64,000 nt of DNA. Source: Histomonas meleagridis 2922-C6/04-290x (Eukaryota; Protista; Parabasalia). How positions within the stretch are numbered: position 1 is the first letter of the stretch; every line of letters begins with the position of its first letter. A program made the translations under genes and the position numbers. This document shows, one piece after another, positions 20,031 through 54,925 of this stretch. The notes under the pieces were generated by a model, which was given only the letters and a program-made list of their open reading frames with translations, was not told the origin of the DNA and did not search any database. The stretch covers positions 744,001-808,000 of the forward strand of contig JAANOX010000205.1 in the NCBI GenBank assembly GCA_020184695.1. The letters are read 5' to 3'.

Positions 20031-22353
20031 ATGAATCAAAATCAAACAGCAACAACAAACCAGAAATCACAAAATGAATGGGAAACATTTGCAGAGCTCG
20101 AAAACATAATCTTTGGTTTGAATATAGATAATTTTGCTCAATCATCAAATTTTATTATCAGCAAATTTTGTAAAGAATATCCAATATCTTATGATATCAT
20201 TATATGCCGAATGATATATACATCTCTTCTGATTAATAGTAATAATTTTGATATATATTTGAGATTATTACAAGAAATTGAAAAATATGAAGAAAATAAT
20301 AAAATCAACTCAAAAATAATAAATTTATTTTCTCAATTTCTACTTAAAAAAAACACACAAGAATCATTTCATTTACTTAATTACATGATTGAGCATAATT
20401 TACTTGAATCAAAAATCATACAAAATATAAGTGAACCATTTTTTGTTCATATTAATCAAGATAAACCAGATAAATATGAATATTCATTTGATCAAGAAAA
20501 TATTGCTTATGAAGAACTATCAAAGAATGATTTTGCACTTCATAAGCAATTAATTGAAGAAGAACATAATCCGAATAAAATTGCAAAAATAATTCGAGAT
20601 GATGAAATCGAAAAACTTCAAGAAATGTCATCACAAACAAATTTTGATTTTACTCAAACAATTCCAAAATCAATTTATGAAAGATGTTCATTTATTAATC
20701 AAAAAAATGTTACATTAATTGATTATGCAGCATTTTTTGGATCAATTAAATGTTTTAAGTATTTACTTATGAATGGTGCAAATGTGGAATACACAGGTAA
20801 ATATGCAGTTGCAGGCGGAAATGAAGAAATCATTCATTTATGTGAACAAAATCATTCATCATTTGAAGATGCATATGAAACAGCAATTATGTTTCATCGA
20901 AATGAAATTTTTAAATATATTTATGAAAATAAAATTGAAGATATTAACATTTTAAAAAAATTAGGAAAAAAATGCGTTTCATGTTTTAATTATGAAATTT
21001 TTACATATTTAGAAAAAGAAGGAATGAAAATTAATGAAAATATCATTAACGAAGCAGCAAAAATTGGAAATATTTTTCTTGTAAAATATTTCATTAAAAA
21101 TAATCATCTTCCAGAAAATATTCTAGTTTTTGCTTCATTTTCAGGAAATATTGAACTTTTTACATACATTTTAAAGCAAGAAGGAATTGATTTTAATGCT
21201 AAAGATATTTATTTGTATTATTTAGAATTTATTTTAATAATTTAATATTACAAAATAATATTTGGAAATTATTTGAATTATTTAAAACAGCACTTATTTG
21301 TGCATCTGAAAATGGTCATACAGAAATAGTTAAATTACTTCTTGAACAAGAAGGAATTGATATTAATGCTAAAGGTATTTATTTGTTTTATTTGATATTT
21401 ATTTTAATAATTTTATATTCCAAAATAATATTTGGAAATTATTTAAATTATTTAAAACAGCACTTATTTGTGCATCTGAAAATGGTCATACAGAAATCGT
21501 TCAATTACTTCTTGAACAAGAAGGAATTGATATTAATGCTAAAGATAAAATTTATTTTAATAATTTGATATTTCAAAATAATATTTGGAAATCATTTAAA
21601 TTATTTCAAACAGCACTTATATTAGCATCTAGATATGGTCATACAGAAATCGTTCAATTACTTCTTGAACAAGAAGGAATTGATATTAATGCTAAAAATA
21701 TTTATTTGTTTTATTTAGAATTTATTTTAATAATTTTATATTCCAAAATAATATTTGGAAATTATTTATATTATTTTGGACAGCACTTATTTGTGCATCT
21801 GTAAAAGGTTATACAGAAATCGTTCAATTACTTCTTGAACAAGAAGGAATTGATATTAATGCTAAAAATATTTATTTGTTTTATTTGATATTTATTTTAA
21901 TAATTTTATATTCCAAAATAATATTTGGAAATTATTTATATTATTTAATAATGCACTTATGATTGCATCTTCAAATAGTCATACAGAAATCGTTCAATTA
22001 CTTCTTGAACAAGAAGGAATTGATATTAATGCTAAAAATATTTATTTGTATTATTTAGAATTTATTTTAATAATTTTATATTCCAAAATAATATTTGGAA
22101 ATTATTTGAATTATTTAAAACAGCACTTATTTGTGCATCTGAAAATGGTCATACAGAAATCGTTCAATTACTTCTTGAACAAGAAGGAATTGATATTAAT
22201 GCTAAAGATAAAATTTATTTTAATAATTTGATATTTCAAAATAATATTTGGAAATTATTTAAATTTTTCGAAACAGCATATGCATCTGCAAATAGGAGTG
22301 GTCACGATGAAATCGTTAAATTACTTTTAGAAAGGACATGCTCGACTAAATAA
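20031..22353 (+). CDS. DUF3447-ankyrin repeat protein, interrupted by 7 intron-like inserts
   Basis: N-terminal DUF3447-type region (TLIDYAAFFGSIKCFKYL, AVAGGNEEIIHLCEQ), then 90-nt ankyrin segments (TALICASENGHTEIVKLLLEQEGIDINAKD) separated by linkers. Removing 5x68 + 2x51 nt gives a 626-aa open frame ending at TAA 22351-22353. Exact junctions inferred. Confidence 0.7.
21207..22272 (+). repeat. Tandem array: 90-nt ankyrin segment + 80/63-nt AT-rich linker
   Basis: Linkers at 21207-21286, 21377-21456, 21547-21609 (63 nt), 21700-21779, 21870-21949, 22040-22119, 22210-22272 (63 nt). Confidence 0.9.
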
Positions 22354-30928: not shown

Positions 30929-33614
30929 TTATGATTTAAGAAATAATTTACTTGTTTCTAAGTGACCATTTTCAGATACATTATTAATATCAATTCCTTT
31001 TTGTTCAAGAAGTAATTTAACTATTTCTGTATAACCTTTTTTAGATGCATACATAAGTGTCGTATTAAATAATATAAATAATTTCCAAATATTATTTTGA
31101 AATATAAAATTGTTAAAATAAATAATAAACAAAATAAATAAATATCTTTAGCATTAATATCAATTCCTTCTTGTTCAAGAAGTAATTTAACTATTTCTGT
31201 ATGACCATATGCAGATGCTTTCATAAGTGCTGTTTGAAATCATCTAAATAATTTCTAAATATTATTTCGAAATATAAAATTATTAAAATAAATAATAAAC
31301 AAAATAAATAAATATCTTTAGCATTAATATCAATTCCTTCTTGTTCAAGAAGTAATTTAACTATTTCTATATGACCTTTTAAAGATGCTCCAATAATTGC
31401 TGTTTCAAATAATTTAAATAATTTCCAAATATCATTTTGACACATCAAATAAATATAATAAATATAGAATATTACAAATAAAAATCATGTTCATTAACAT
31501 TTATAGATCCTTTTTTAAGAAGAAATTTGACTATATCAAGATATCCTTTCAAGGATGCTAAAATAAGTGCAGATTGAAATGTTTTTAACAATTTCCAAAT
31601 ACTATTTTGAAATACCAACATATTAAAATAAACTTTATTTTGAATAAATAAATACCTTTAACATTAACATCTACATCTTTTTGCTCGAGAAGTAATTTTG
31701 CGGTTTCTTTGTGATCATTTTCCAATGCAAATATAAGATTTGTGTTAAACATTATGAATATTTTCCATAAGCTTTTTAAAATCATTAAATTATTTATTTA
31801 AATATTGATATTATGAAATAAACACTTTTACTATTAATATAAATTCCATTTTGTTCAATAAGTAATTTAACAATGTCTATATAACCATTTTCAGATGCAA
31901 TGCTGAATGCTGTTTTAAAGAATTTAAACAATTTCCAAATGTATTTTTAAAACATCAAACTAAAAAAATAAAAATAATACAAAATAATTGAATATTTATA
32001 GTATTAATATTAAATCCTCCTCGTTCAATAAGTAATTTAATAACTTCAATATGATCGTTTTTAGAAGCTGCTATTAGTGCTATATCAAATATTAGAGATA
32101 ATTCCCAAATATTATTTAAAAATCCAAAATCATCAGAAAAAATTTTAATTAAAACAAATTAATGTTTTTAAGATTGAGATCAATTTTCTCTTGTTTCAGA
32201 AGTAATTTTACTATTTCACTATTTCCATTTTCAGATGCTCTAATAAGTGCTGTATTAAATATTTATATTATATTCCAAATATAATTTTAAATCATCAAAT
32301 TAATAAAACAAATTTTAAAAGTAATAAAAAAATATCTTTTTCATTAATATTAATATCTTTTTGTTCAAGAATATATTTTACTAGTTCTATATTATCAGAA
32401 CAAGAAGAAAACACTAAAATATCTTTTGGGATTCGATTATTTTCAATCAAATGTTTAACAAGATAAAAATTCCCAATTTTTGCTGTTTCATTTATAATAA
32501 AATTATCAATTTGATTTTCTTTTTCTATAAATGAAAAAATTTCATAATTTCCACTTTTAACACAAACATCAATTATTTTATTATAATTTTTATCTCCAAA
32601 TTCATTTGAAAAATGCATATAATTCATTACTTGTGATTGGTTTTCATCTTGAGAATCTTTATCATAAATGTATTTAAAGATATCATTTCGATGAAATTTA
32701 ATTGCGATTTCAAATAAATCGTCAAATGATGCATGATTTTGTTCACATAAATGAATAATCTCTAAGTTTCCACCTGCAATAGCATATTTTCCAATATCAT
32801 TTACATTAGCACCATTTATAAGTAAAAATTTAAAACATTTTATAGCAGAAAAAAATGCTGCATAATCAATTAATGTAACATTTCTTTGATTAATAAAATC
32901 ATATCTTTCATAAAGTGATGGTTCAATTATTTGATTAAAATCAAAATCATTTTGTGATGATATTTCTTGAAGCTTTTCTATTTCATCATTTCGAATTATT
33001 TTTACAATTTCATTTGGATTATGTCCTTCTTTAGTTAATTGCTTATGAAGTTCCCAATCATTCTTTGATAGTTCTTCATAATTTTTGAAAAAAGTATATT
33101 CAAATGGATCTGTAAAGGTTTGTTGTTTGTTTTCTTTTTCTGTTTTATAATGAGCAAAATATTTGGATTTAATATTTGATGTAATATTTTTATTTATTAA
33201 ATTTTCCATAATCATTCTTTCTATAAGAAAATATGCTTCTTGTGTTTCAAATTTAGAGATATATTTACCAAAGATATCAAATATTTTAATATTGTTAATA
33301 TTTAATTCTTCTTCTTTCGATTGAATTGATTTTAAAAATTTAAAATATAAATCGTAATCATTCCTTAAAGAAGAAAATGCTGAATATAATAATATACAAA
33401 TAGCAATATTAAATGAATACGTGAAATTAGGATCAAATAAATTCATCGCTTGGTGAATTGATATATTAAAATTTTCTTCATTTAGATTAAAAATTATTTG
33501 TTCAAGCTCAATTAAAAATTGCATAAAAATGGATTCACCTTTAGAGCTCTCTCCTTTACTTCCTAAAGAATTTTCTATCTGTGATGTACCCAATTTTGTT
33601 CCACTTTCACACAT
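30929..33614 (-). CDS. DUF3447-ankyrin repeat protein (paralog of 20031), interrupted by 8 intron-like inserts
   Basis: Same DUF3447 region (TLIDYAAFFSAIKCFKFL), then 90-nt ankyrin segments separated by eight 80-nt linkers. Removing 8x68 nt gives a 713-aa open frame ending at TAA 30931-30929. Confidence 0.7.
31064..32333 (-). repeat. Tandem array with exact 170-nt period (90-nt ankyrin segment + 80-nt linker)
   Basis: Linkers at 32333-32254, 32163-32084, 31993-31914, 31823-31744, 31653-31574, 31483-31404, 31313-31234, 31143-31064. Confidence 0.9.
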
Positions 33615-48860: not shown

Positions 48861-50174
48861 ATGTCTTCTGATGGGAAAGACTGTGGTCTTTATTGGAAAG
48901 GAACCCTTAAAAAGAAGACATTTCTAGGGATTTGGCAAACCTGTTTTTGTGAACTTCAACTCACCGAATTTTACATACGTAAAACAGAATCGACAGCTCA
49001 AATCAATAAAAGGATCCCTATGAATTCAGATACTATTGTTAATCTTATCGAAACAAATAATGGTCCCATTCTTACTGTTCAAGGAGCTGATAATGAAGTA
49101 ATTTATCTTAAAAGCGACAATGAAGAATCAATTTTTAAGTGGGTGATTGCACTTAGGTCAGCTACTTTTTACAATGCTAGTCTTGGAATCGAATCATTCA
49201 ATTTACTTAGGGTTATTGGAAGAGGATTTTATGGTAAAGTTACTCTTGTTTCAAAAAAGGATACGGGTGAACATTATGCACTTAAAACCATCCACAAAGC
49301 TCGTATTATCAAAGCGCGAAAGCTTCAAATCCCAATAACCGAATTAAACATACTCAAAAAGCTTCGGCATCCATTTATTGTCAACCTCAAATTTGCTTTC
49401 CAATCAGCCACCAAGTTTTATCTTGGTCTGGAATATGTTCCAGGCGGCGATCTCAAAACATTAATAACTCGCAATCGCGAGAGCCTCACACCTAACCTCA
49501 TTCGTCTTTACGTTGCTGAAGTTGCACTTGCTTTGAACCACATGCATAGTGTTGGTGTATTGTATCGCGATCTTAAACCAGAAAATCTTCTTATCAACAA
49601 TGATGGTCATTTAAAGGTCACTGATTTTGGGCTTTCTGAGGACGTTTCAGTTCTCAACTATAAATCTAGCGAGCTATGTGGTACTGCTGAATATGTTGCA
49701 CCAGAAGTAATCAAACGTGAACATTATTCATATGAAGTTGATTGGTGGGGACTTGGCATACTCACCTATGAGTTGTTTTTCGGTGTAACTCCTTTCTTTG
49801 CTCAAACAACAGAACTTATGTACCAAAGAATAGTTTCCAAAAAACCTCTATTCCCTATCGGCGCCGATAGTGACGTTGTATCGTTCGTGAAGTCACTTCT
49901 TAAAAAGGACCCTAAAAAAAGGGCAAATTTTGAGGAGCTAAAGGGGAAACCGTTTTGGGGTGGCCTTGACTTTGAAAAAGTGGCAAATAGAGAATATGTT
50001 CCTGACTTCATTCCTTTATTAGAAGGCCCTGATGACGTGAAATATTTCGATGAGGAATTCACTGATGAAAAACCATGCGATTCCCCAGCAACGCCAATTA
50101 TTGGGAGAAATGCTATGTTCACTGAATTTGATACAATTGAGGACTTAGGCGAGCACTGGTTCCAACAGAAATAA
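48861..50174 (+). CDS. PH-domain AGC protein kinase (Akt/PKB-like)
   Basis: N-terminal PH; IGRGFYGKV, YRDLKPEN, DFG, GTAEYVAPE; AGC C-terminal YFDEEFT. ATG at 48861. Confidence 0.92.
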   Translation: MSSDGKDCGLYWKGTLKKKTFLGIWQTCFCELQLTEFYIRKTESTAQINKRIPMNSDTIVNLIETNNGPILTVQGADNEVIYLKSDNEESIFKWVIALRSATFYNASLGIESFNLLRVIGRGFYGKVTLVSKKDTGEHYALKTIHKARIIKARKLQIPITELNILKKLRHPFIVNLKFAFQSATKFYLGLEYVPGGDLKTLITRNRESLTPNLIRLYVAEVALALNHMHSVGVLYRDLKPENLLINNDGHLKVTDFGLSEDVSVLNYKSSELCGTAEYVAPEVIKREHYSYEVDWWGLGILTYELFFGVTPFFAQTTELMYQRIVSKKPLFPIGADSDVVSFVKSLLKKDPKKRANFEELKGKPFWGGLDFEKVANREYVPDFIPLLEGPDDVKYFDEEFTDEKPCDSPATPIIGRNAMFTEFDTIEDLGEHWFQQK

Positions 50175-50699
50175 CATTTTTTCGCGACTGTGTATAAAAA
50201 TTAGTTGATATCTGTTACTTTTTTGTAATTTGTTTTAACTATGATCAAAAAATTATTTTTCAAATTCTGAATAATCATATTGAAGTTCTACAAAAGACTT
50301 TGCGAGATTACATTTGAAAATTCTTTCAGATAATGGTTTCGATATTTGGTTTATAAACATATGTTTTTTGATCGATGTTCATTCGAAATCTAAAAACGAA
50401 CGGTTGACAAAAAATTGGTTTACAGATGACTTAGCAAATATAAATTTATAATCCACATGCCATATCTAATGTTTAAAAAAATCAAATTTAAAGAGTGTTA
50501 TGCAAAATTTCTTCATAAGGAATCATATTTCATCTTAAACTTTAAACGATAAAAGTTTCTGTTGAAGCAAATAAAAGAACGTTCTTCCAAAAAAACCGAT
50601 TCAAATTTGAATGTGGTATAAAAAAAATTCCGAATCGAATTTTGATAGCGAAAATTCAGTATAACTGTAAAATCTCTGATTTCAAAATTTTTGGAAACA

Positions 50700-52307
50700 A
50701 TGTTTTTCTGGTGCTTGGTTACTTCTACAATACTTTTTCAGCAAACTTGCCAAGAGAACGAATACAGACTTAAGCCTAGCTTTAGGAAAGTTGCTACGGA
50801 AAAAAAGCTCATTTCAGATGCATTCCATCCTAATTCAAAATTAAAAACGCACAGCTCAGAACATGCGATTAAATTTCAAGTATTTCTAGATAAAACAGAT
50901 TATTTTGTGATATCTTCACCTTACTTTGAAGTTCAAAAACAAAACAATGTTACATCATCACAAAGAAAAATTCTATCATCCGATTTTTTTGAAGAAGGTG
51001 ACCTTGCAGGTATTACCGTCACTAATGCATCATCAACTGAGTTGTTAGAAAAGTATTTTAATATTCCGCATGTTTATACAGGCACTTCTTTTGAGCCACT
51101 TGATACTGAACAAAAAATTATGTTTCCAATTACTGATGAGAATCTAACATTTTCTATGTATTATCCTTACATCGAAAATATCTCTCGTGATGATGGTAAT
51201 TCGATGATTATATCTACAAGTAACCAAAAAACAGTTGAAGACCAAAAAAAGATTGATATATATTGTCAAGCAAATGTACAAGGAGGAACTTCAGTTTCAT
51301 TTAATTTGAAACATATAATGTCATCCATAGTATTATCTGTTACATTAGGTGATGGATTTACACCTGATCAAATTTCATCAGGTTGGACATTTTATTTATC
51401 AAATTTAAGACTTAATGGAACTTTTAATATTTATAGTGGATATGCAACAGCAGATTTGAACTCAGAACCAGTTACTGATTGGAATATCACAGATTTTGTT
51501 CAAACTAATGATGAAACAACAGGTAAAAGACAATATATATTATATTTATTTCCGCAAACATTAGAAAAAGGTTTAAATTTTTCGGCATGTTATAATGGAA
51601 AGTTTTACAATAAAACCATAAGTCTTTCTGAATTAAAAACCAATACAAGATATAATTTATCAACAGTATTGGATGAGTTTAATACATTAACATTTTCTGA
51701 ATCAAATACATATACTAATTCAAACACTTTTACAAATTCTCATACATTTAAAGAGTCAAATACTTTTACTAAATCAAATATTTTTACTGAGTCTTTTCCA
51801 AATGATGTTTCGATAACAAAAACTTTTATTTTGATTCATACATTACAAGATACTGTTACGTTCACTCAAACTTTATATCATTCGAAAATATTATCAATGA
51901 TATTAATTAATTCATCATATTTTTATACTTATTCAGAATTATTTTATTATAATTTTTCATTATTTCATTATTTAACTGAAACTGATATTTATTCACGTTC
52001 TTTTATGTATTATCAAACATCAGATTTAAATAATAATAATGAAGATGTTAACAATAAAGAAATGAATCTTACAATGATTATTGTTATTGTTTGTGTTTCA
52101 ATTATAATTATTGTTCTCATTATTTTATTTGTTATATTCTTGCGACGAAAACATAATATTCAAAAAGAAGATTTAACAGAAGAAGGAAATAAAGATGAAC
52201 AAGAAATCAACGCTAACACCAATATAACATCATATGAATATATTCCGACTGTTGAAGAAGATCCATTTGCTAAAGATTTTAAAGAAGATAATATGTTCAA
52301 AATATGA
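50700..52307 (+). CDS. Type I membrane surface protein with fimbrillin (Mfa_like_1)-like ectodomain, S/T-x-T-F stalk, TM and acidic tail
   Basis: Signal-like N-terminus; FEEGDLAGI, FSMYYPY, VSFNLKHIMSSI..TLGDGF, LFPQT, LKTNTRY; TM 52072-52140; tail EEDPFAKDFKE. Confidence 0.7.
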   Translation: MFFWCLVTSTILFQQTCQENEYRLKPSFRKVATEKKLISDAFHPNSKLKTHSSEHAIKFQVFLDKTDYFVISSPYFEVQKQNNVTSSQRKILSSDFFEEGDLAGITVTNASSTELLEKYFNIPHVYTGTSFEPLDTEQKIMFPITDENLTFSMYYPYIENISRDDGNSMIISTSNQKTVEDQKKIDIYCQANVQGGTSVSFNLKHIMSSIVLSVTLGDGFTPDQISSGWTFYLSNLRLNGTFNIYSGYATADLNSEPVTDWNITDFVQTNDETTGKRQYILYLFPQTLEKGLNFSACYNGKFYNKTISLSELKTNTRYNLSTVLDEFNTLTFSESNTYTNSNTFTNSHTFKESNTFTKSNIFTESFPNDVSITKTFILIHTLQDTVTFTQTLYHSKILSMILINSSYFYTYSELFYYNFSLFHYLTETDIYSRSFMYYQTSDLNNNNEDVNNKEMNLTMIIVIVCVSIIIIVLIILFVIFLRRKHNIQKEDLTEEGNKDEQEINANTNITSYEYIPTVEEDPFAKDFKEDNMFKI

Positions 52308-52643
52308 ATTTCATTCATGTTGAAGAGTATTTATTTAAATAAACTGTTTTTATTTGTTAATAATGTCTTTGAATTTGAAATAATTAGTTAAAAATACGAA
52401 AATAAATTTAAAATATATCATTCCCCATTGTTAAACAATTTATTAACATATTTTTTTTATACCAAATATTTTAAATGATTATCGTACACATTCTTAAATA
52501 GTATAAATACAAATTAACCAAATTCTACATTAAAATTATCCAAATATGAGATAAATTTTGATTAAAAAATAATTTAAAACATAAAATTTTTATATAGTAT
52601 ATAATAACAATAAATATATCAATAAAAAAGAACTTTTTTTTTG

Positions 52644-53738
52644 TTATTTCTCTGTTACATATTCATGGACATGTATATCCAAGTTTGCGGCAATTGTACT
52701 TATTTCCTGTTCGTTCGCGAGACATTTTAGCTTTGGTTCTCTGTATATATCACCTCTAATTTCGATCAGTGCCAATCTTTCCAGCTGTTGCACCTGTAAA
52801 TAAGCAGAATAATCGAAATCGATTTCGAAAAGATGACTATAAAAAAGTGCCTTTGATATAGCAAACACTCTTTCCAATGATACGTATTCATGATCTTCAA
52901 GAAGTTTTGTCGATCTTCTTTTCTTTTTTAATGATCTAGCAAATCTCATCAGATCAGATGTAGTTGAAGTTTTAGAAGCAATATAAACCGCAAGGAGAAT
53001 CACAGAAGCAACAGTAGACAACCCATCAATACGGCAAACCTTCTGAATGCGCATTGTGTCGAGACATTTAAGAATTTCTTTCCCTATCGTCTTTTGGGGC
53101 GCCCCAGAAACCGAATGACATATGAAAATGATGTCTCTGATGTCCTTTGTCATCGGCTCTGAAATGGTAATGATCTTGCGAACTAATACACCAAAGGACT
53201 CATCGTCTTCTTTGTTATAGGCAGAAAGAATAATTTGTTCAAGCTCAGGTTTATCATACGCAGGAAAGATAATGTTTGTAATTGAAAATGGATCAATTCT
53301 GAAGAAAGAGGGATTAACATGTGTAACAAAAATAAAAGTAAAATTTGTGAGAATGTGTGAATCAATTACAGCAATTGATTGTGCTAAAAGATCATTCGCA
53401 CCATCTTCAAGAAGATCAAAAGAATCAAAAACTATAATTGTTTCAACTTCATCATTAACATATTTGGTAATTTGTTGAAACGAAGAAATTTTCTTAATTT
53501 TTGTTTCTTCATCTGATAATTGTTGAACCATACTTGTCAATACATCTGAAATTGTATCGCCAGTATCACAATAGAGATGAACACATCTTGTTGTATCTTT
53601 CACTTGGTCAATAAGAAAGTTCACCGTTATTGTTTTTCCAGATGAAACAGGTCCTGATAAAAGAATTATTTTGCTCCCTGATTTTAAAGAGTATAAAAGC
53701 TTTGCGTATTGTTCTTGGCGACAAATTGGATGTTCCAT
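52644..53738 (-). CDS. ORC5: Origin recognition complex subunit 5
   Basis: AAA+ Walker A GPVSSGKT, Walker B VFDSFD, FPAY.K.EL, C-terminal SLERVFAI. Confidence 0.75.
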   Translation of the reverse strand: MEHPICRQEQYAKLLYSLKSGSKIILLSGPVSSGKTITVNFLIDQVKDTTRCVHLYCDTGDTISDVLTSMVQQLSDEETKIKKISSFQQITKYVNDEVETIIVFDSFDLLEDGANDLLAQSIAVIDSHILTNFTFIFVTHVNPSFFRIDPFSITNIIFPAYDKPELEQIILSAYNKEDDESFGVLVRKIITISEPMTKDIRDIIFICHSVSGAPQKTIGKEILKCLDTMRIQKVCRIDGLSTVASVILLAVYIASKTSTTSDLMRFARSLKKKRRSTKLLEDHEYVSLERVFAISKALFYSHLFEIDFDYSAYLQVQQLERLALIEIRGDIYREPKLKCLANEQEISTIAANLDIHVHEYVTEK

Positions 53739-53821
53739 GTTTGAGGAAATGTGACATGAAAACTCTGAGAACGACCGTTATCACTTGTGTTAATTTTTTA
53801 ACATAGTCTGTGAATTTGGAT

Positions 53822-53836
53822 GCGGTTTTGGCCTTT
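53822..53836 (+). promoter_or_regulatory. M3 (GCGGTT) + M5 (CCTTT) core promoter of RPL23A
   Basis: GCGGTTTTGGCCTTTCTTCAC-ATG. Confidence 0.7.
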
Positions 53837-53842
53837 CTTCAC

Positions 53843-54259
53843 ATGTCAGGCAAAGCAGAAGCCGCAGCAAAAGCAGCTGAACAAGGACAAAAAAAGCAAA
53901 TCAAGAAGACAAGGAATTTCAAGAAGTTCCAAAAGCCAAAAGCTACAATTCCAGCTAAGAAACCACAATATGAACATAAGGCTGTTCAACCAGTTTCTTT
54001 AAAGCGTAATGATTACAAGATCATCAAAGGCCCAGTTACATCAGATAAAGCTTCTCGTAAACTTGAAGATGAAAACACAATGACATTCTATGTCGATATC
54101 CGTGCTAAGAAACCAGAAATTGCTGCAGCCATCAATCGCCTTTATCATGTTAAACCAGTCAGTGTTAAGACATTGATCACACCCAAGTTCCTTAAGAAGG
54201 CTTATGTTCGTCTTCCAGAAGAAGTTGAAGCAATGAATCTTGCAAACGAAATGGCATAA
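53843..54259 (+). CDS. RPL23A: 60S ribosomal protein L23a (uL23)
   Basis: IIKGPVTSDKA..KLEDENTMTF.VD, KKAYVRL. ATG at 53843. Confidence 0.95.
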   Translation: MSGKAEAAAKAAEQGQKKQIKKTRNFKKFQKPKATIPAKKPQYEHKAVQPVSLKRNDYKIIKGPVTSDKASRKLEDENTMTFYVDIRAKKPEIAAAINRLYHVKPVSVKTLITPKFLKKAYVRLPEEVEAMNLANEMA

Positions 54260-54322
54260 ATTGTCACGTTAAATTTTACGTTTTATTTAATTACTTTCTC
54301 GGTGAATATGAAAAATTTAAAA

Positions 54323-54925
54323 TTAACCACAACATGACTTTTTACCCTGACCATTGGATTGCTTGATATCTACAGATTGTGTCTTGGTCGCTTTGTTTAT
54401 AATGTTACCTTTGTTTTGTATTAATTTGTTGAGAGCCATTTGGAACATTCGATCAATACCGGTTCCTTGAGAAGCACTAGTTTCGGCGTAAAGCGCAAAG
54501 TTATCAGTAGCTAATGAATTAGCTGTTTGAAATTCAATTACTCTACTATCTTCTAGATCTATTTTGTTACCGCAAATTATTATAACAATTTCATCTTCTA
54601 CGTTAGTATTAAGTTCTTTGATCCAATAGCTAACGGAATCATAACTTTCAGCTTTTGTAACATCAAAAACGATGATTGCAATCAAAGCACTTCTATAATA
54701 CATTGGTGCCAACCCTCTATAAACTTCTTGCCCAGCGGTATCCCAAATCAAAAGTTCTAGTTGTTGTCCTTCAATATTTACATCTTTTGTTACAAAAGCA
54801 GCACCAATTGTTGGATTAACATTTTCCTGAAATGTTCCTGAGACATACTTCGAGACAATACTCGTTTTTCCAACACCAGAATCGCCAAGAAGCACCAATT
54901 TCACTGCATTTCCGTCACCACTCAT
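54323..54925 (-). CDS. Rab family small GTPase (Rab5/21-like clade)
   Basis: GDSGVGKTS, PTIGAAF, WDTAGQE, GNKIDL, ETSA, C-terminal CCG. ATG at 54925. Confidence 0.95.
   Translation of the reverse strand: MSGDGNAVKLVLLGDSGVGKTSIVSKYVSGTFQENVNPTIGAAFVTKDVNIEGQQLELLIWDTAGQEVYRGLAPMYYRSALIAIIVFDVTKAESYDSVSYWIKELNTNVEDEIVIIICGNKIDLEDSRVIEFQTANSLATDNFALYAETSASQGTGIDRMFQMALNKLIQNKGNIINKATKTQSVDIKQSNGQGKKSCCG

What the first reader, a model, noticed from the sequence alone, without database searches (positions are those of the whole stretch)
50700..52307. Protist surface protein built from a Bacteroidetes fimbrillin (type V pilin)-like domain
Seen: an ordered motif series F.EGD.AGI / F..YYPY / NQ......DI / VSF.LKHIMS.I...LGDGF / L.PQT / L....RY. 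Established knowledge: this pattern is typical of Mfa_like_1 fimbrillin-family proteins of gut Bacteroidetes. Here it is fused to a parabasalid S/T-x-T-F stalk, a TM helix and an acidic DPF..DF tail, and has host-like AT content. Inference: a laterally acquired bacterial pilin fold redeployed as an adhesin or decoy, possibly engaging gut bacteria, their pili or mucus.
Basis: partly seen in the sequence, partly recalled or inferred. Interest (0 to 1): 0.75.

Follow-up and report, generated by a model that had tools for sequence, protein, structure and literature searches.

The report
Bacterial pilin head on Histomonas protein
The poultry gut parasite Histomonas meleagridis has an intact, unannotated gene whose outer domain is a pilus-subunit fold taken from gut Bacteroides bacteria and mounted on the parasite's own membrane stalk, probably as a binding receptor, though its function and expression are not yet shown.

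Summary
Window 50700-52307(+) is one intronless ORF of 535 codons.

- **Eukaryotic setting.** The genome is Histomonas meleagridis. The gene lies between ORC5 and an AGC kinase, has 27% GC, and is identical in a second assembly, where no gene is called at this position.
- **Bacterial relatives.** Nearly all relatives are Bacteroidales lipoproteins. The best one (38% identity) is 85% identical to a gene in a type V pilus locus of a chicken-caecum Bacteroides MAG.
- **Lost pilin features.** The lipobox Cys and the C-terminal Trp strand are absent. An SNTFT hexapeptide stalk, a TM helix and an EEDPFxxDF tail take their place.
- **Other eukaryote-like members.** Two metagenomic proteins have the same head-to-stalk junction and group with it (UFBoot 94).

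My reading is a laterally acquired pilin head used as a non-polymerising, endocytosis-coupled surface binder. Function is inferred, and RNA support is weak. First-stage readers flagged about ten similar loci on other pieces of this genome; I did not check them. I found no paper describing this.

The parts
50700..52307 (+). Whole CDS (535 codons plus stop) of the fimbrillin-headed type I membrane protein. It is not called as a gene in the public assembly.
   Evidence: It is 100% identical in L006 from GCA_020184695.1, where no gene is on record between ORC5 and the kinase.
50700..50753 (+). Short hydrophobic N-terminus (residues 1-18), inferred to be a eukaryotic signal peptide. It replaces the bacterial lipoprotein signal and lipobox.
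   Evidence: Read directly from the sequence. The lipobox Cys is present in 73/73 bacterial rows of A1 and in none of the 3 eukaryote-like rows.
50754..50987 (+). N-terminal extension (residues 19-96), about 44 residues longer than in bacteria and poorly modelled. It holds the counterpart of the bacterial N-terminal strand and an RK dipeptide (residues 89-90, nt 50964-50969) close to the bacterial Arg cleavage column.
   Evidence: pLDDT is below 50 for most of model residues 1-65. Alignment; column counts.
50988..51704 (+). Mfa_like_1 (PF13149) fimbrillin-like domain, residues 97-335. The two-sandwich pilin fold spans about residues 66-340 (nt 50895-51719) in the model.
51689..51793 (+). Stalk of about six 18-nt (hexapeptide S/T-N-T-F-T-x) tandem repeats. 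The first unit is modelled as the last beta-strand of the pilin fold, in the place of the bacterial C-terminal 'TI..W' strand.
   Evidence: TRF, period 18. (strand at model 311-319). (Trp present in 70/73 bacteria and absent in the eukaryote-like rows). The stalk is shared with P0001, P0002 and P0018.
51794..52073 (+). Aromatic and hydrophobic-rich juxtamembrane region (residues 366-458) with no recognised family.
   Evidence: sequence. One search shows no Pfam domain there. P0018 has a comparable region.
52074..52142 (+). Single transmembrane helix (residues 459-481).
   Evidence: Hydropathy scan, mean Kyte-Doolittle up to 3.87.
52143..52307 (+). Acidic cytoplasmic tail (residues 482-535) with YEYI (YxxPhi, 512-515) and the invariant E-DPF..DF core (519-527, nt 52254-52280). 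The DNA coding for this core is multi-copy in the genome.
   Evidence: core invariant in three proteins, one of which carries an unrelated head. (depth 12,367 against about 499 in bin 52138-52328, and a joint landing exactly at 52254). The DxF, acidic-cluster and YxxPhi motif classes are those screened in trichomonad BspA/Pmp tails in PMC6701047.

Best explanation
This is a Histomonas meleagridis gene for a type I membrane protein. Its ectodomain is a complete type V pilin-family fold (Pfam Mfa_like_1) that a Dientamoebidae-lineage parabasalid acquired by lateral transfer from a gut Bacteroidales bacterium. The most similar gene known today lies among tandem Mfa_like_1 genes next to an Mfa2-type anchor gene in a chicken-caecum Bacteroides.

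In the protist, the parts that make a bacterial pilin polymerise were replaced:
- The lipoprotein signal became a eukaryotic signal peptide.
- The conserved C-terminal donor strand with its Trp was replaced, at one fixed junction, by the lineage's own SNTFT hexapeptide stalk, an aromatic juxtamembrane segment, a TM helix and an acidic tail.
- The tail carries YxxPhi and E-DPF..DF motifs of the kind that adaptor (AP-2-type) machinery recognises.

I therefore read the protein as a monomeric binding head (adhesin or receptor) held away from the membrane, not as a pilus subunit. It would be recycled or taken up with its ligand by endocytosis or phagocytosis. Plausible ligands are caecal bacteria, which Histomonas eats and depends on, or host mucus and epithelium.

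Shown here: domain identity, fold, genomic setting, architecture, loss of pilin hallmarks, and bacterial kinship. Inferred: surface location, binding, endocytic coupling, and that the gene is expressed under some condition.
For: **Identity.**
- PF13149 E 1.1e-26.
- PDB sequence hits 3ufi and 4k4k.
- AF2 model pLDDT 78.5, with the core above 85.
- Foldseek top 32 matches are all Bacteroidales/Porphyromonas fimbrial proteins.

**Lateral origin.**
- The exhaustive HMMER search gave 230 hits. Of the 150 listed, 136 have a lipobox by pattern, 12 are fragments or variant signals, and only 2 look like protist proteins.
- The best hit, P0003 (115 bits against 81 for the next), sits on 50%-GC contigs.
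- Its 85%-identical orthologue is in Candidatus Bacteroides intestinavium isolate ChiHecec1B25. All credible loci are Bacteroidales.
- That orthologue lies in the gene order Mfa2, Mfa_like_1, Mfa_like_1, Mfa_like_1.

**Eukaryotic residence.**
- The neighbours are PRMT5, PMT, an AGC kinase, ORC5, Rab, RecQ and adaptin.
- Gene GC is 0.266 and GC3 is 0.157.
- The same ORF is present in JAANOX010000205.1, which is H. meleagridis according to PMC8529796.

**Single fusion.** The window protein, P0018 and P0005 share the head-to-stalk junction and form one group (UFBoot 94 / SH-aLRT 97, 96% of bootstrap trees).

**Loss of pilin hallmarks.** The lipobox Cys is present in 73/73 bacterial rows against 0/3 eukaryote-like rows. 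The C-terminal Trp is present in 70/73 against 0/3.

**Chassis.** The stalk, TM helix and E-DPF..DF tail are shared with P0002, which has an unrelated head, and the stalk is shared with the H. meleagridis 'bacterial Ig-like' protein P0001. There is precedent in trichomonad BspA/Pmp proteins, which combine a sticky bacterial-type head with a TMD and endocytic motifs (PMC6701047).

**Intact ORF.** A 535-codon ORF in 27%-GC DNA has a chance probability of about 1e-20 by my own arithmetic from base composition.
Against: - **Expression is not demonstrated.** In three RNA-like runs the gene is covered only by patchy contigs at depth 2.5-4.5. The adjacent kinase reaches 80-180, and one intergenic piece (50262-50434) reaches 4.5 too.
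- **No gene is called here** in the public assembly, so proteomic studies that used that annotation could not have seen the protein.
- **No binding, localisation or endocytosis data exist.**
- **The N-terminal 65 residues of the ectodomain are not confidently modelled**.
- **The donor cannot be placed on the tree.** The eukaryote-like group has long branches and its sister is unresolved, so long-branch attraction could inflate the single-origin signal.
- **An RK dipeptide lies two columns from the bacterial Arg cleavage site**, so a proteolytic maturation step cannot be excluded.
Confidence: 0.62

Rival explanations
1. Silent relic. The gene was acquired and fused as described, but it is now an unexpressed, functionless paralogue on its way to decay. 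It would be one surplus copy of an expanded family.
For: - RNA depth is only 2.5-4.5 and patchy, similar to one intergenic piece.
- No gene is called here in the public assembly.
- First-stage notes suggest many paralogues elsewhere in the genome (unverified).
Against: - The 535-codon frame is uninterrupted in DNA with about 8% stop-codon probability per codon.
- The signal peptide, full fold, TM helix and invariant tail core are all intact.
- Genic coverage in the RNA runs is more continuous than flanking intergenic coverage: about 62% of the gene against 36% upstream and 0% downstream in X4.
- The cultures behind those runs probably lack the caecal flora, so a conditional gene could be off. 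This last point is inference.
Confidence: 0.18
2. Active strand-exchange partner. The head keeps a working acceptor groove. After a protease removes the N-terminal strand near R89/K90, it captures the free C-terminal donor strands of Bacteroidales pilins, or of its own paralogues. That would tether prey bacteria by their pilus subunits, or build short polymers on the parasite surface.
For: - The complete two-domain pilin fold is retained, including the region that corresponds to the N-terminal strand (model 47-321 against chain 33-307).
- A basic RK dipeptide lies two columns from the Arg/Lys that 69/73 bacterial relatives carry, and P0018 has it as well.
- Histomonas lives among Bacteroidales and feeds on bacteria (PMC8529796).
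Against: - In the strictly aligned column the three eukaryote-like rows have I, L and T, and P0005 has no basic residue nearby.
- The N-terminal strand region is low-confidence.
- The protein's own donor strand and its Trp are gone.
- No pilus partner genes are nearby.
- No experiment bears on this reading.
Confidence: 0.06
3. Bacterial contamination or chimeric assembly. On this reading the ORF is really a bacterial gene stitched into the protist contig.
For: The head domain belongs to a bacterial family. H. meleagridis cultures contain bacteria (PMC8529796).
Against: - The gene is flanked on both sides by eukaryotic genes on a single contig.
- The locus is identical in a second assembly on a 1.0-Mb contig, and it lies within a 12,972-nt Logan contig of a DNA run at uniform depth.
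- GC is 27% against 50% for the nearest bacterial gene.
- The same reading frame continues into a parabasalid stalk, TM helix and tail.
- There is no lipobox.
Confidence: 0.01

Closest known systems
Bacteroides Mfa_like_1 fimbrial proteins with solved structures (BACOVA_04980, PDB 3UFI; BACUNI_00621, PDB 4K4K; BF1861, PDB 3SY6)
   Different: The bacterial proteins are lipoproteins of about 300 aa, with a lipobox Cys, a conserved Arg after the N-terminal strand and a free C-terminal Trp strand. The Histomonas protein has none of these. It adds about 44 N-terminal residues, a repeat stalk, a TM helix and a cytoplasmic tail.
Fimbrillin of Candidatus Bacteroides intestinavium (chicken-caecum MAG; L007 1989-2930) and its metagenomic orthologue P0003
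   Same: These are the nearest sequences found: 38% identity over 213 residues, E 9e-41 pairwise. P0003 scores 115 bits in the exhaustive search against 81 for the next hit. They share the motifs GFTP..I..GW.F, WNIT and Y.(L/M)YL(F/Y)PQTL. Both organisms live in the bird caecum.
   Different: The bacterial gene has 50% GC, encodes a lipoprotein and sits in a type V pilus locus next to an Mfa2-family anchor gene and two more Mfa_like_1 genes. The tree does not place it as sister to the eukaryote-like group.
Porphyromonas gingivalis type V pili (FimA, Mfa1-Mfa5)
   Different: The relationship is distant, at 6-10% identity. Those proteins polymerise by protease-mediated strand exchange after transport as lipoproteins (established knowledge). 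Here the lipobox and donor strand are absent and the protein is anchored by a C-terminal TM helix.
Trichomonad BspA-like and Pmp-like surface proteins (PMC6701047)
   Same: Same design: a bacterial-type 'sticky' N-terminal head, with the prokaryotic C-terminus replaced by a single eukaryotic TMD and a tail that has DxF, acidic-cluster and YxxPhi endocytic motifs.
   Different: The head is a type V pilin fold rather than leucine-rich repeats or Pmp repeats. The SNTFT stalk and the E-DPF..DF core appear specific to the Histomonas-like lineage.
H. meleagridis-specific 'bacterial Ig-like' membrane protein family (HOG02302 in PMC8529796; for example P0001)
   Same: Same SNTF(T/S) hexapeptide stalk: 44% identity over the stalk. 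The family was proposed as adhesion proteins, possibly for bacteria taken as food.
   Different: The head domain is different. P0001 has no Pfam hit and no PF13149 match.

Membership tests
Pfam PF13149 Mfa_like_1 (fimbrillin-like domain family) | Profile match above the curated gathering score | tested here: met
   94.8 bits against a cut-off of 27, E 1.1e-26, profile positions 8-241 of 246.
Type V pilin (FimA/Mfa1) superfamily | Two tandem transthyretin-like beta-sandwich domains | tested here: met
Type V pilin (FimA/Mfa1) superfamily | Lipoprotein signal peptide with a lipobox cysteine | tested here: not met
   Cys is present in 73/73 bacterial rows of A1, and the window protein has H in that column. 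The N-terminus is a short hydrophobic eukaryote-type signal.
Type V pilin (FimA/Mfa1) superfamily | Conserved Arg/Lys after the N-terminal strand (site of protease maturation) | tested here: inconclusive
   R or K is present in 69/73 bacterial rows. The window protein has I in the aligned column, but it has RK (residues 89-90) two columns upstream, as does P0018. P0005 has none.
Type V pilin (FimA/Mfa1) superfamily | Free C-terminal donor strand with a conserved Trp | tested here: not met
   Trp is present in 70/73 bacterial rows and absent in all three eukaryote-like rows. The strand position is taken by the first stalk repeat, and the chain continues to a TM helix.
Type V pilin (FimA/Mfa1) superfamily | Location in a fimbrial gene cluster (anchor, stalk and tip genes) | tested here: not met
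   The neighbours are an AGC kinase and ORC5. The closest bacterial relative does lie in such a cluster.
Type V pilin (FimA/Mfa1) superfamily | Polymerisation into a pilus by strand exchange | not testable with these tools
   This needs biochemistry.
Parabasalid surface proteins with a bacterial-type head and an endocytic TM tail (BspA/Pmp-like design) | N-terminal signal, a single C-terminal TM helix, and a short cytoplasmic tail with DxF, acidic-cluster or YxxPhi motifs | tested here: met
   TM helix at residues 459-481. The tail has YEYI, DPF, KDF and an acidic run. The core is invariant in P0018 and P0002. The motif classes are those in PMC6701047.
Parabasalid surface proteins with a bacterial-type head and an endocytic TM tail (BspA/Pmp-like design) | Cell-surface or endocytic localisation and an adhesion phenotype | not testable with these tools
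   No localisation or binding data exist. The gene is absent from the annotation used in the proteomic studies.

The most novel reading that the evidence does not exclude
A eukaryote has kept a working type V pilin acceptor groove on its surface. After the N-terminal strand is removed near R89/K90, the Histomonas head would accept the C-terminal donor strands of Bacteroidales pilins, or of its own paralogues. The parasite would in effect plug into the bacterial pilus-assembly reaction, either to seize prey or symbiont bacteria or to build a pilus-like polymer on a eukaryotic membrane.
Probability: 0.05. Interest if true: 0.9.

Novelty: new variant of a known kind. Interest (0 to 1): 0.55.

Why it matters
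Type V pili are regarded as a Bacteroidota speciality. In the searches I could run, this is the first eukaryotic, TM-anchored, non-lipoprotein version of the fold, and no paper in the searched library links fimbrillins with parabasalids.

It adds a new head to the known trichomonad habit of mounting bacterial adhesin modules on an endocytic membrane chassis.

The closest bacterial gene comes from a chicken-caecum Bacteroides, the same niche as the parasite. That gives a concrete, testable link between Histomonas and the caecal flora it depends on.

The gene is missing from the public annotation, so transcriptomic, proteomic and surfaceome studies of this poultry pathogen would have overlooked it, and possibly a whole paralogous family. 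It is a candidate surface antigen or adhesin worth re-annotating.

Tried and rejected
**Searches that found nothing useful**
- The word-index search with the full protein found only stalk and tail look-alikes, not the head.
- The search with a eukaryote-only profile returned only P0018.
- The JGI metagenome scan found no relative.
- P0003 alone found nothing in GTDB genomes. A tighter alignment, A5, succeeded.
- The profile search with A2 was dominated by bacterial hits and gave only one named protein.
- The listing of cluster members gave almost no names.
- Rfam on 53700-54400 found nothing. That highly expressed region turned out to be a ribosomal protein L23 gene.
- The origin of the 'ONAT22-1' and 'BRZ' metagenomes could not be traced in papers.

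**Analyses that stayed unresolved**
- Tree placement of the donor. The eukaryote-like group attaches by a long branch and its sister is unresolved. A very divergent paralogue (L007_dn) distorted the second tree.
- Copy number of the tail module cannot be read from summed contig depths.
- I could not fetch or verify the paralogues that first-stage readers noted on other pieces of the genome.

**Readings rejected**
- Contamination or chimeric assembly.
- Transfer from eukaryote to bacterium, because the family is huge and sits in pilus operons in Bacteroidales.
- Convergence, because both profile and fold matches are far too strong.

**Operator conditions**
- Read laying was given 5,701 letters.
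Full report
**The feature**

The finding sits on a single open reading frame, 50691..52307(+). Its first ATG is at 50700, which gives a 535-residue protein.

The match is not a chance pattern:
- Pfam-A gives PF13149 Mfa_like_1 at E 1.1e-26, 94.8 bits against a gathering score of 27, over residues 97-335 and nearly the whole profile.
- NCBIfam has nothing for the head.
- A sequence search of the PDB finds two Bacteroides 'putative cell adhesion' proteins: 3UFI at E 6e-10 and 4K4K at E 8.5e-7.
- Language-model neighbours in the ESM Atlas are all Bacteroidota PF13149 clusters.

**Fold**

I built an AlphaFold2 model of residues 20-345 from a 76-row alignment. It has mean pLDDT 78.5 and pTM 0.76. 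The core (model residues about 80-320) is mostly above 85, and the first 65 or so residues are below 50.

- Foldseek against the PDB returns fimbrial proteins of Bacteroides, Parabacteroides and Porphyromonas for the best 32 matches. 3UFI leads at E 1.1e-17 with a target-normalised TM of 0.71.
- The aligned range is model 47-321 against chain 33-307, so the whole two-domain prepilin fold is represented.

**Organism and setting**

The neighbours are ordinary eukaryotic genes: PRMT5, a protein O-mannosyltransferase, an AGC kinase, ORC5, a Rab, a RecQ helicase and an adaptin.

The ORC5 neighbour is found exactly on GCA_020184695.1, contig JAANOX010000205.1. JAANOX is one of the two Histomonas meleagridis assemblies of Palmieri et al. 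2021 (PMC8529796). H. meleagridis is a parabasalid of the family Dientamoebidae.

In that assembly the ORF is 100% identical. No gene is on record between ORC5 and the kinase, so the gene is unannotated. This explains why neither protein database holds it.

The composition is host-like or more extreme: GC 0.266 and GC3 0.157, against 0.295 for the window.

Contamination is excluded by the flanks, by the second assembly, by a 12,972-nt DNA contig at uniform depth across the locus, and by the in-frame continuation into protist-type sequence.

**Relatives**

An exhaustive HMMER pass over 1.84 billion representatives gave 230 hits at E <= 1e-3 and none closer than 38% identity.
- Of the 150 listed, 136 carry a signal peptide plus lipobox by a simple pattern, and 12 are fragments or variant signals.
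- Only two are protist-like.
  - P0018 has 559 aa and lies on a 31%-GC metagenomic contig. It has the same head, SNTFT stalk, TM helix and EEDPFAADF tail.
  - P0005 is a truncated protein of 327 aa.
- All three score above the PF13149 threshold.

The best bacterial hit, P0003, scores 115 bits against 81 for the next. It comes from 50%-GC gut-metagenome contigs and is followed by another PF13149 gene.

A scan of GTDB species genomes with a tight alignment around P0003 found 52 loci, nearly all in Bacteroides, Prevotella/Segatella, Parabacteroides, Phocaeicola, Alistipes and Muribaculaceae. The best, at 85% identity to P0003, is in Candidatus Bacteroides intestinavium isolate ChiHecec1B25, a chicken-caecum MAG.

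That gene is 38% identical to the Histomonas head over 213 residues. It lies in the order Mfa2-family anchor, Mfa_like_1, Mfa_like_1 (this gene), Mfa_like_1. By analogy with the P. gingivalis mfa operon, where the genes after the anchor encode tip or accessory subunits (established knowledge), the donor gene was plausibly an accessory or tip fimbrillin. This is inference.

**Phylogeny**

In a careful ML tree (76 rows, 309 columns, LG+C20 PMSF) the three eukaryote-like rows form one group. Support is UFBoot 94 and SH-aLRT 97, and the group appears in 96% of bootstrap trees. In a second tree with named genomes they fall inside Bacteroidales diversity, but with no resolved sister.

All three have long branches, so attraction is a concern. 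Independent support for a single origin comes from the identical head-to-stalk junction in all three.

**What changed in the protist**

Column counts on the 76-row alignment:

| Feature | Bacterial rows | Eukaryote-like rows |
|---|---|---|
| Lipobox Cys | 73/73 | 0/3 |
| Arg/Lys of the 'TRA' maturation site | 69/73 | I, L, T in the strict column |
| C-terminal Trp of the 'TI..W' strand | 70/73 | 0/3 |

At the maturation site, the window protein and P0018 do have an RK dipeptide two columns upstream.

The model places the first stalk repeat as the last strand of the fold.

The stalk is an 18-nt tandem repeat at 51689-51793. It is shared with the H. meleagridis 'bacterial Ig-like' protein P0001 and with P0002, whose head is unrelated.

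The TM helix is residues 459-481. The tail holds YEYI and an E-DPF..DF core that is invariant in the window protein, P0018 and P0002. The DNA for this core is multi-copy: many contigs pile up in bin 52138-52328, and a joint lands exactly at 52254.

Trichomonad BspA and Pmp proteins show the same logic. They have a bacterial-type head, with the prokaryotic C-terminus replaced by a TMD and a tail carrying DxF, acidic-cluster or YxxPhi motifs (PMC6701047).

**Expression**

Runs X4, X5 and X7 behave as RNA. One contig ends in poly(A) at 50217, just after the kinase stop, and the intergenic DNA is nearly bare.
- The fimbrillin-like gene is covered only by separate 100%-identical contigs at depth 2.5-4.5, against 80-180 for the kinase.
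- One intergenic piece reaches 4.5 too.
- Genic coverage is more continuous than flanking coverage.

This amounts to weak, inconclusive evidence of low transcription in culture.

**Interpretation**

The identity and the lateral origin of the head are very well supported (I put them at 0.9 or higher).

The most likely working model is a monomeric, membrane-anchored binding head on a stalk. It would be coupled by its tail to adaptor-mediated uptake and would serve attachment to caecal bacteria or host surfaces, or their capture. It is not a polymerising pilin, because the lipobox and donor strand are gone and no pilus partner genes are present.

Rivals:
- A silent relic (0.18).
- A head that still performs strand exchange with bacterial pilins or paralogues (about 0.06, the most novel reading).
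- An assembly artefact (0.01 or less).

**Novelty**

No paper in the searched library connects fimbrillins or PF13149 with parabasalids or Histomonas.
- The only 'fimbri' hits in Histomonas papers are fimbrin and E. coli type-1 fimbriae.
- The Histomonas genome paper mentions BspA-like and 'bacterial Ig-like' membrane families, but not this one.

I rate it as a new variant of a known kind. It is a clear PF13149 and type V pilin-fold member in a new architecture and a new domain of life. It is also a new head within the known parabasalid practice of borrowing bacterial adhesin modules.

**Earlier notes of this scan**

First-stage readers flagged about ten similar 'fimbrillin-like domain on a protist chassis' loci on other pieces of the same genome. 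I could not fetch those pieces, so they remain unverified leads that point to a paralogous family.

**Operator conditions**

Noticed in passing
window 53843-54259 (+): RNA depth is very high here (up to about 74,000 against 20-180 for the neighbours) and no Rfam family matches. The public assembly calls a 138-aa Ribosomal_L23 gene at the matching place (L006 2480-2896), which explains the depth. The gene falls below the 150-aa ORF listing.
   Followed up: partly
window 50174-50217: An RNA contig of run X5 ends in a run of A at 50217, about 43 nt after the AGC-kinase stop codon. This is a likely poly(A) addition site, and it shows that runs X4, X5 and X7 are RNA.
   Followed up: partly
window 52254-52294: The DNA that codes the EEDPFAKDF tail core is shared at 95% identity or more with many other contigs of the same genome. 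Summed depth is about 12,400 against 500, and the downstream loose ends differ. A short conserved tail module recurs among surface-protein genes, which could reflect gene conversion or recent family expansion.
   Followed up: partly
window 50700-52307 / L006 4432-6048: No gene is on record for this 1.6-kb ORF in GCA_020184695.1, although both flanking genes are called. Other chassis genes in this genome may be unannotated as well.
   Followed up: partly
L032, L035, L054 (match at 2001-2993): Mfa_like_1 genes in Parabacteroides sp. AM08-6, Phocaeicola vulgatus and Segatella copri are nearly identical (tree branch lengths about 0.003). This suggests recent transfer of fimbrillin genes between Bacteroidales genera.
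   Followed up: no
L019, L020, L057: Relatives of the Bacteroides fimbrillin sit on contigs of MAGs labelled Acutalibacteraceae, Eggerthellaceae and Ruminococcus bicirculans. These are probably mis-binned Bacteroidales contigs rather than true Firmicutes or Actinobacteria genes.
   Followed up: no
window 21207-22272 and 31064-32333: First-stage notes on this window describe ankyrin repeats that are each split by intron-like inserts without GT-AG ends, and eight 80-nt linkers. I did not examine them.
   Followed up: no
P0002 (Logan contig, 893 aa): This protein has the same stalk (about 60 hexapeptide repeats), TM helix and EDDPFHDDF tail, but an unrelated Cys-rich head of about 400 aa with no Pfam match. 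The chassis therefore carries several different heads.
   Followed up: no
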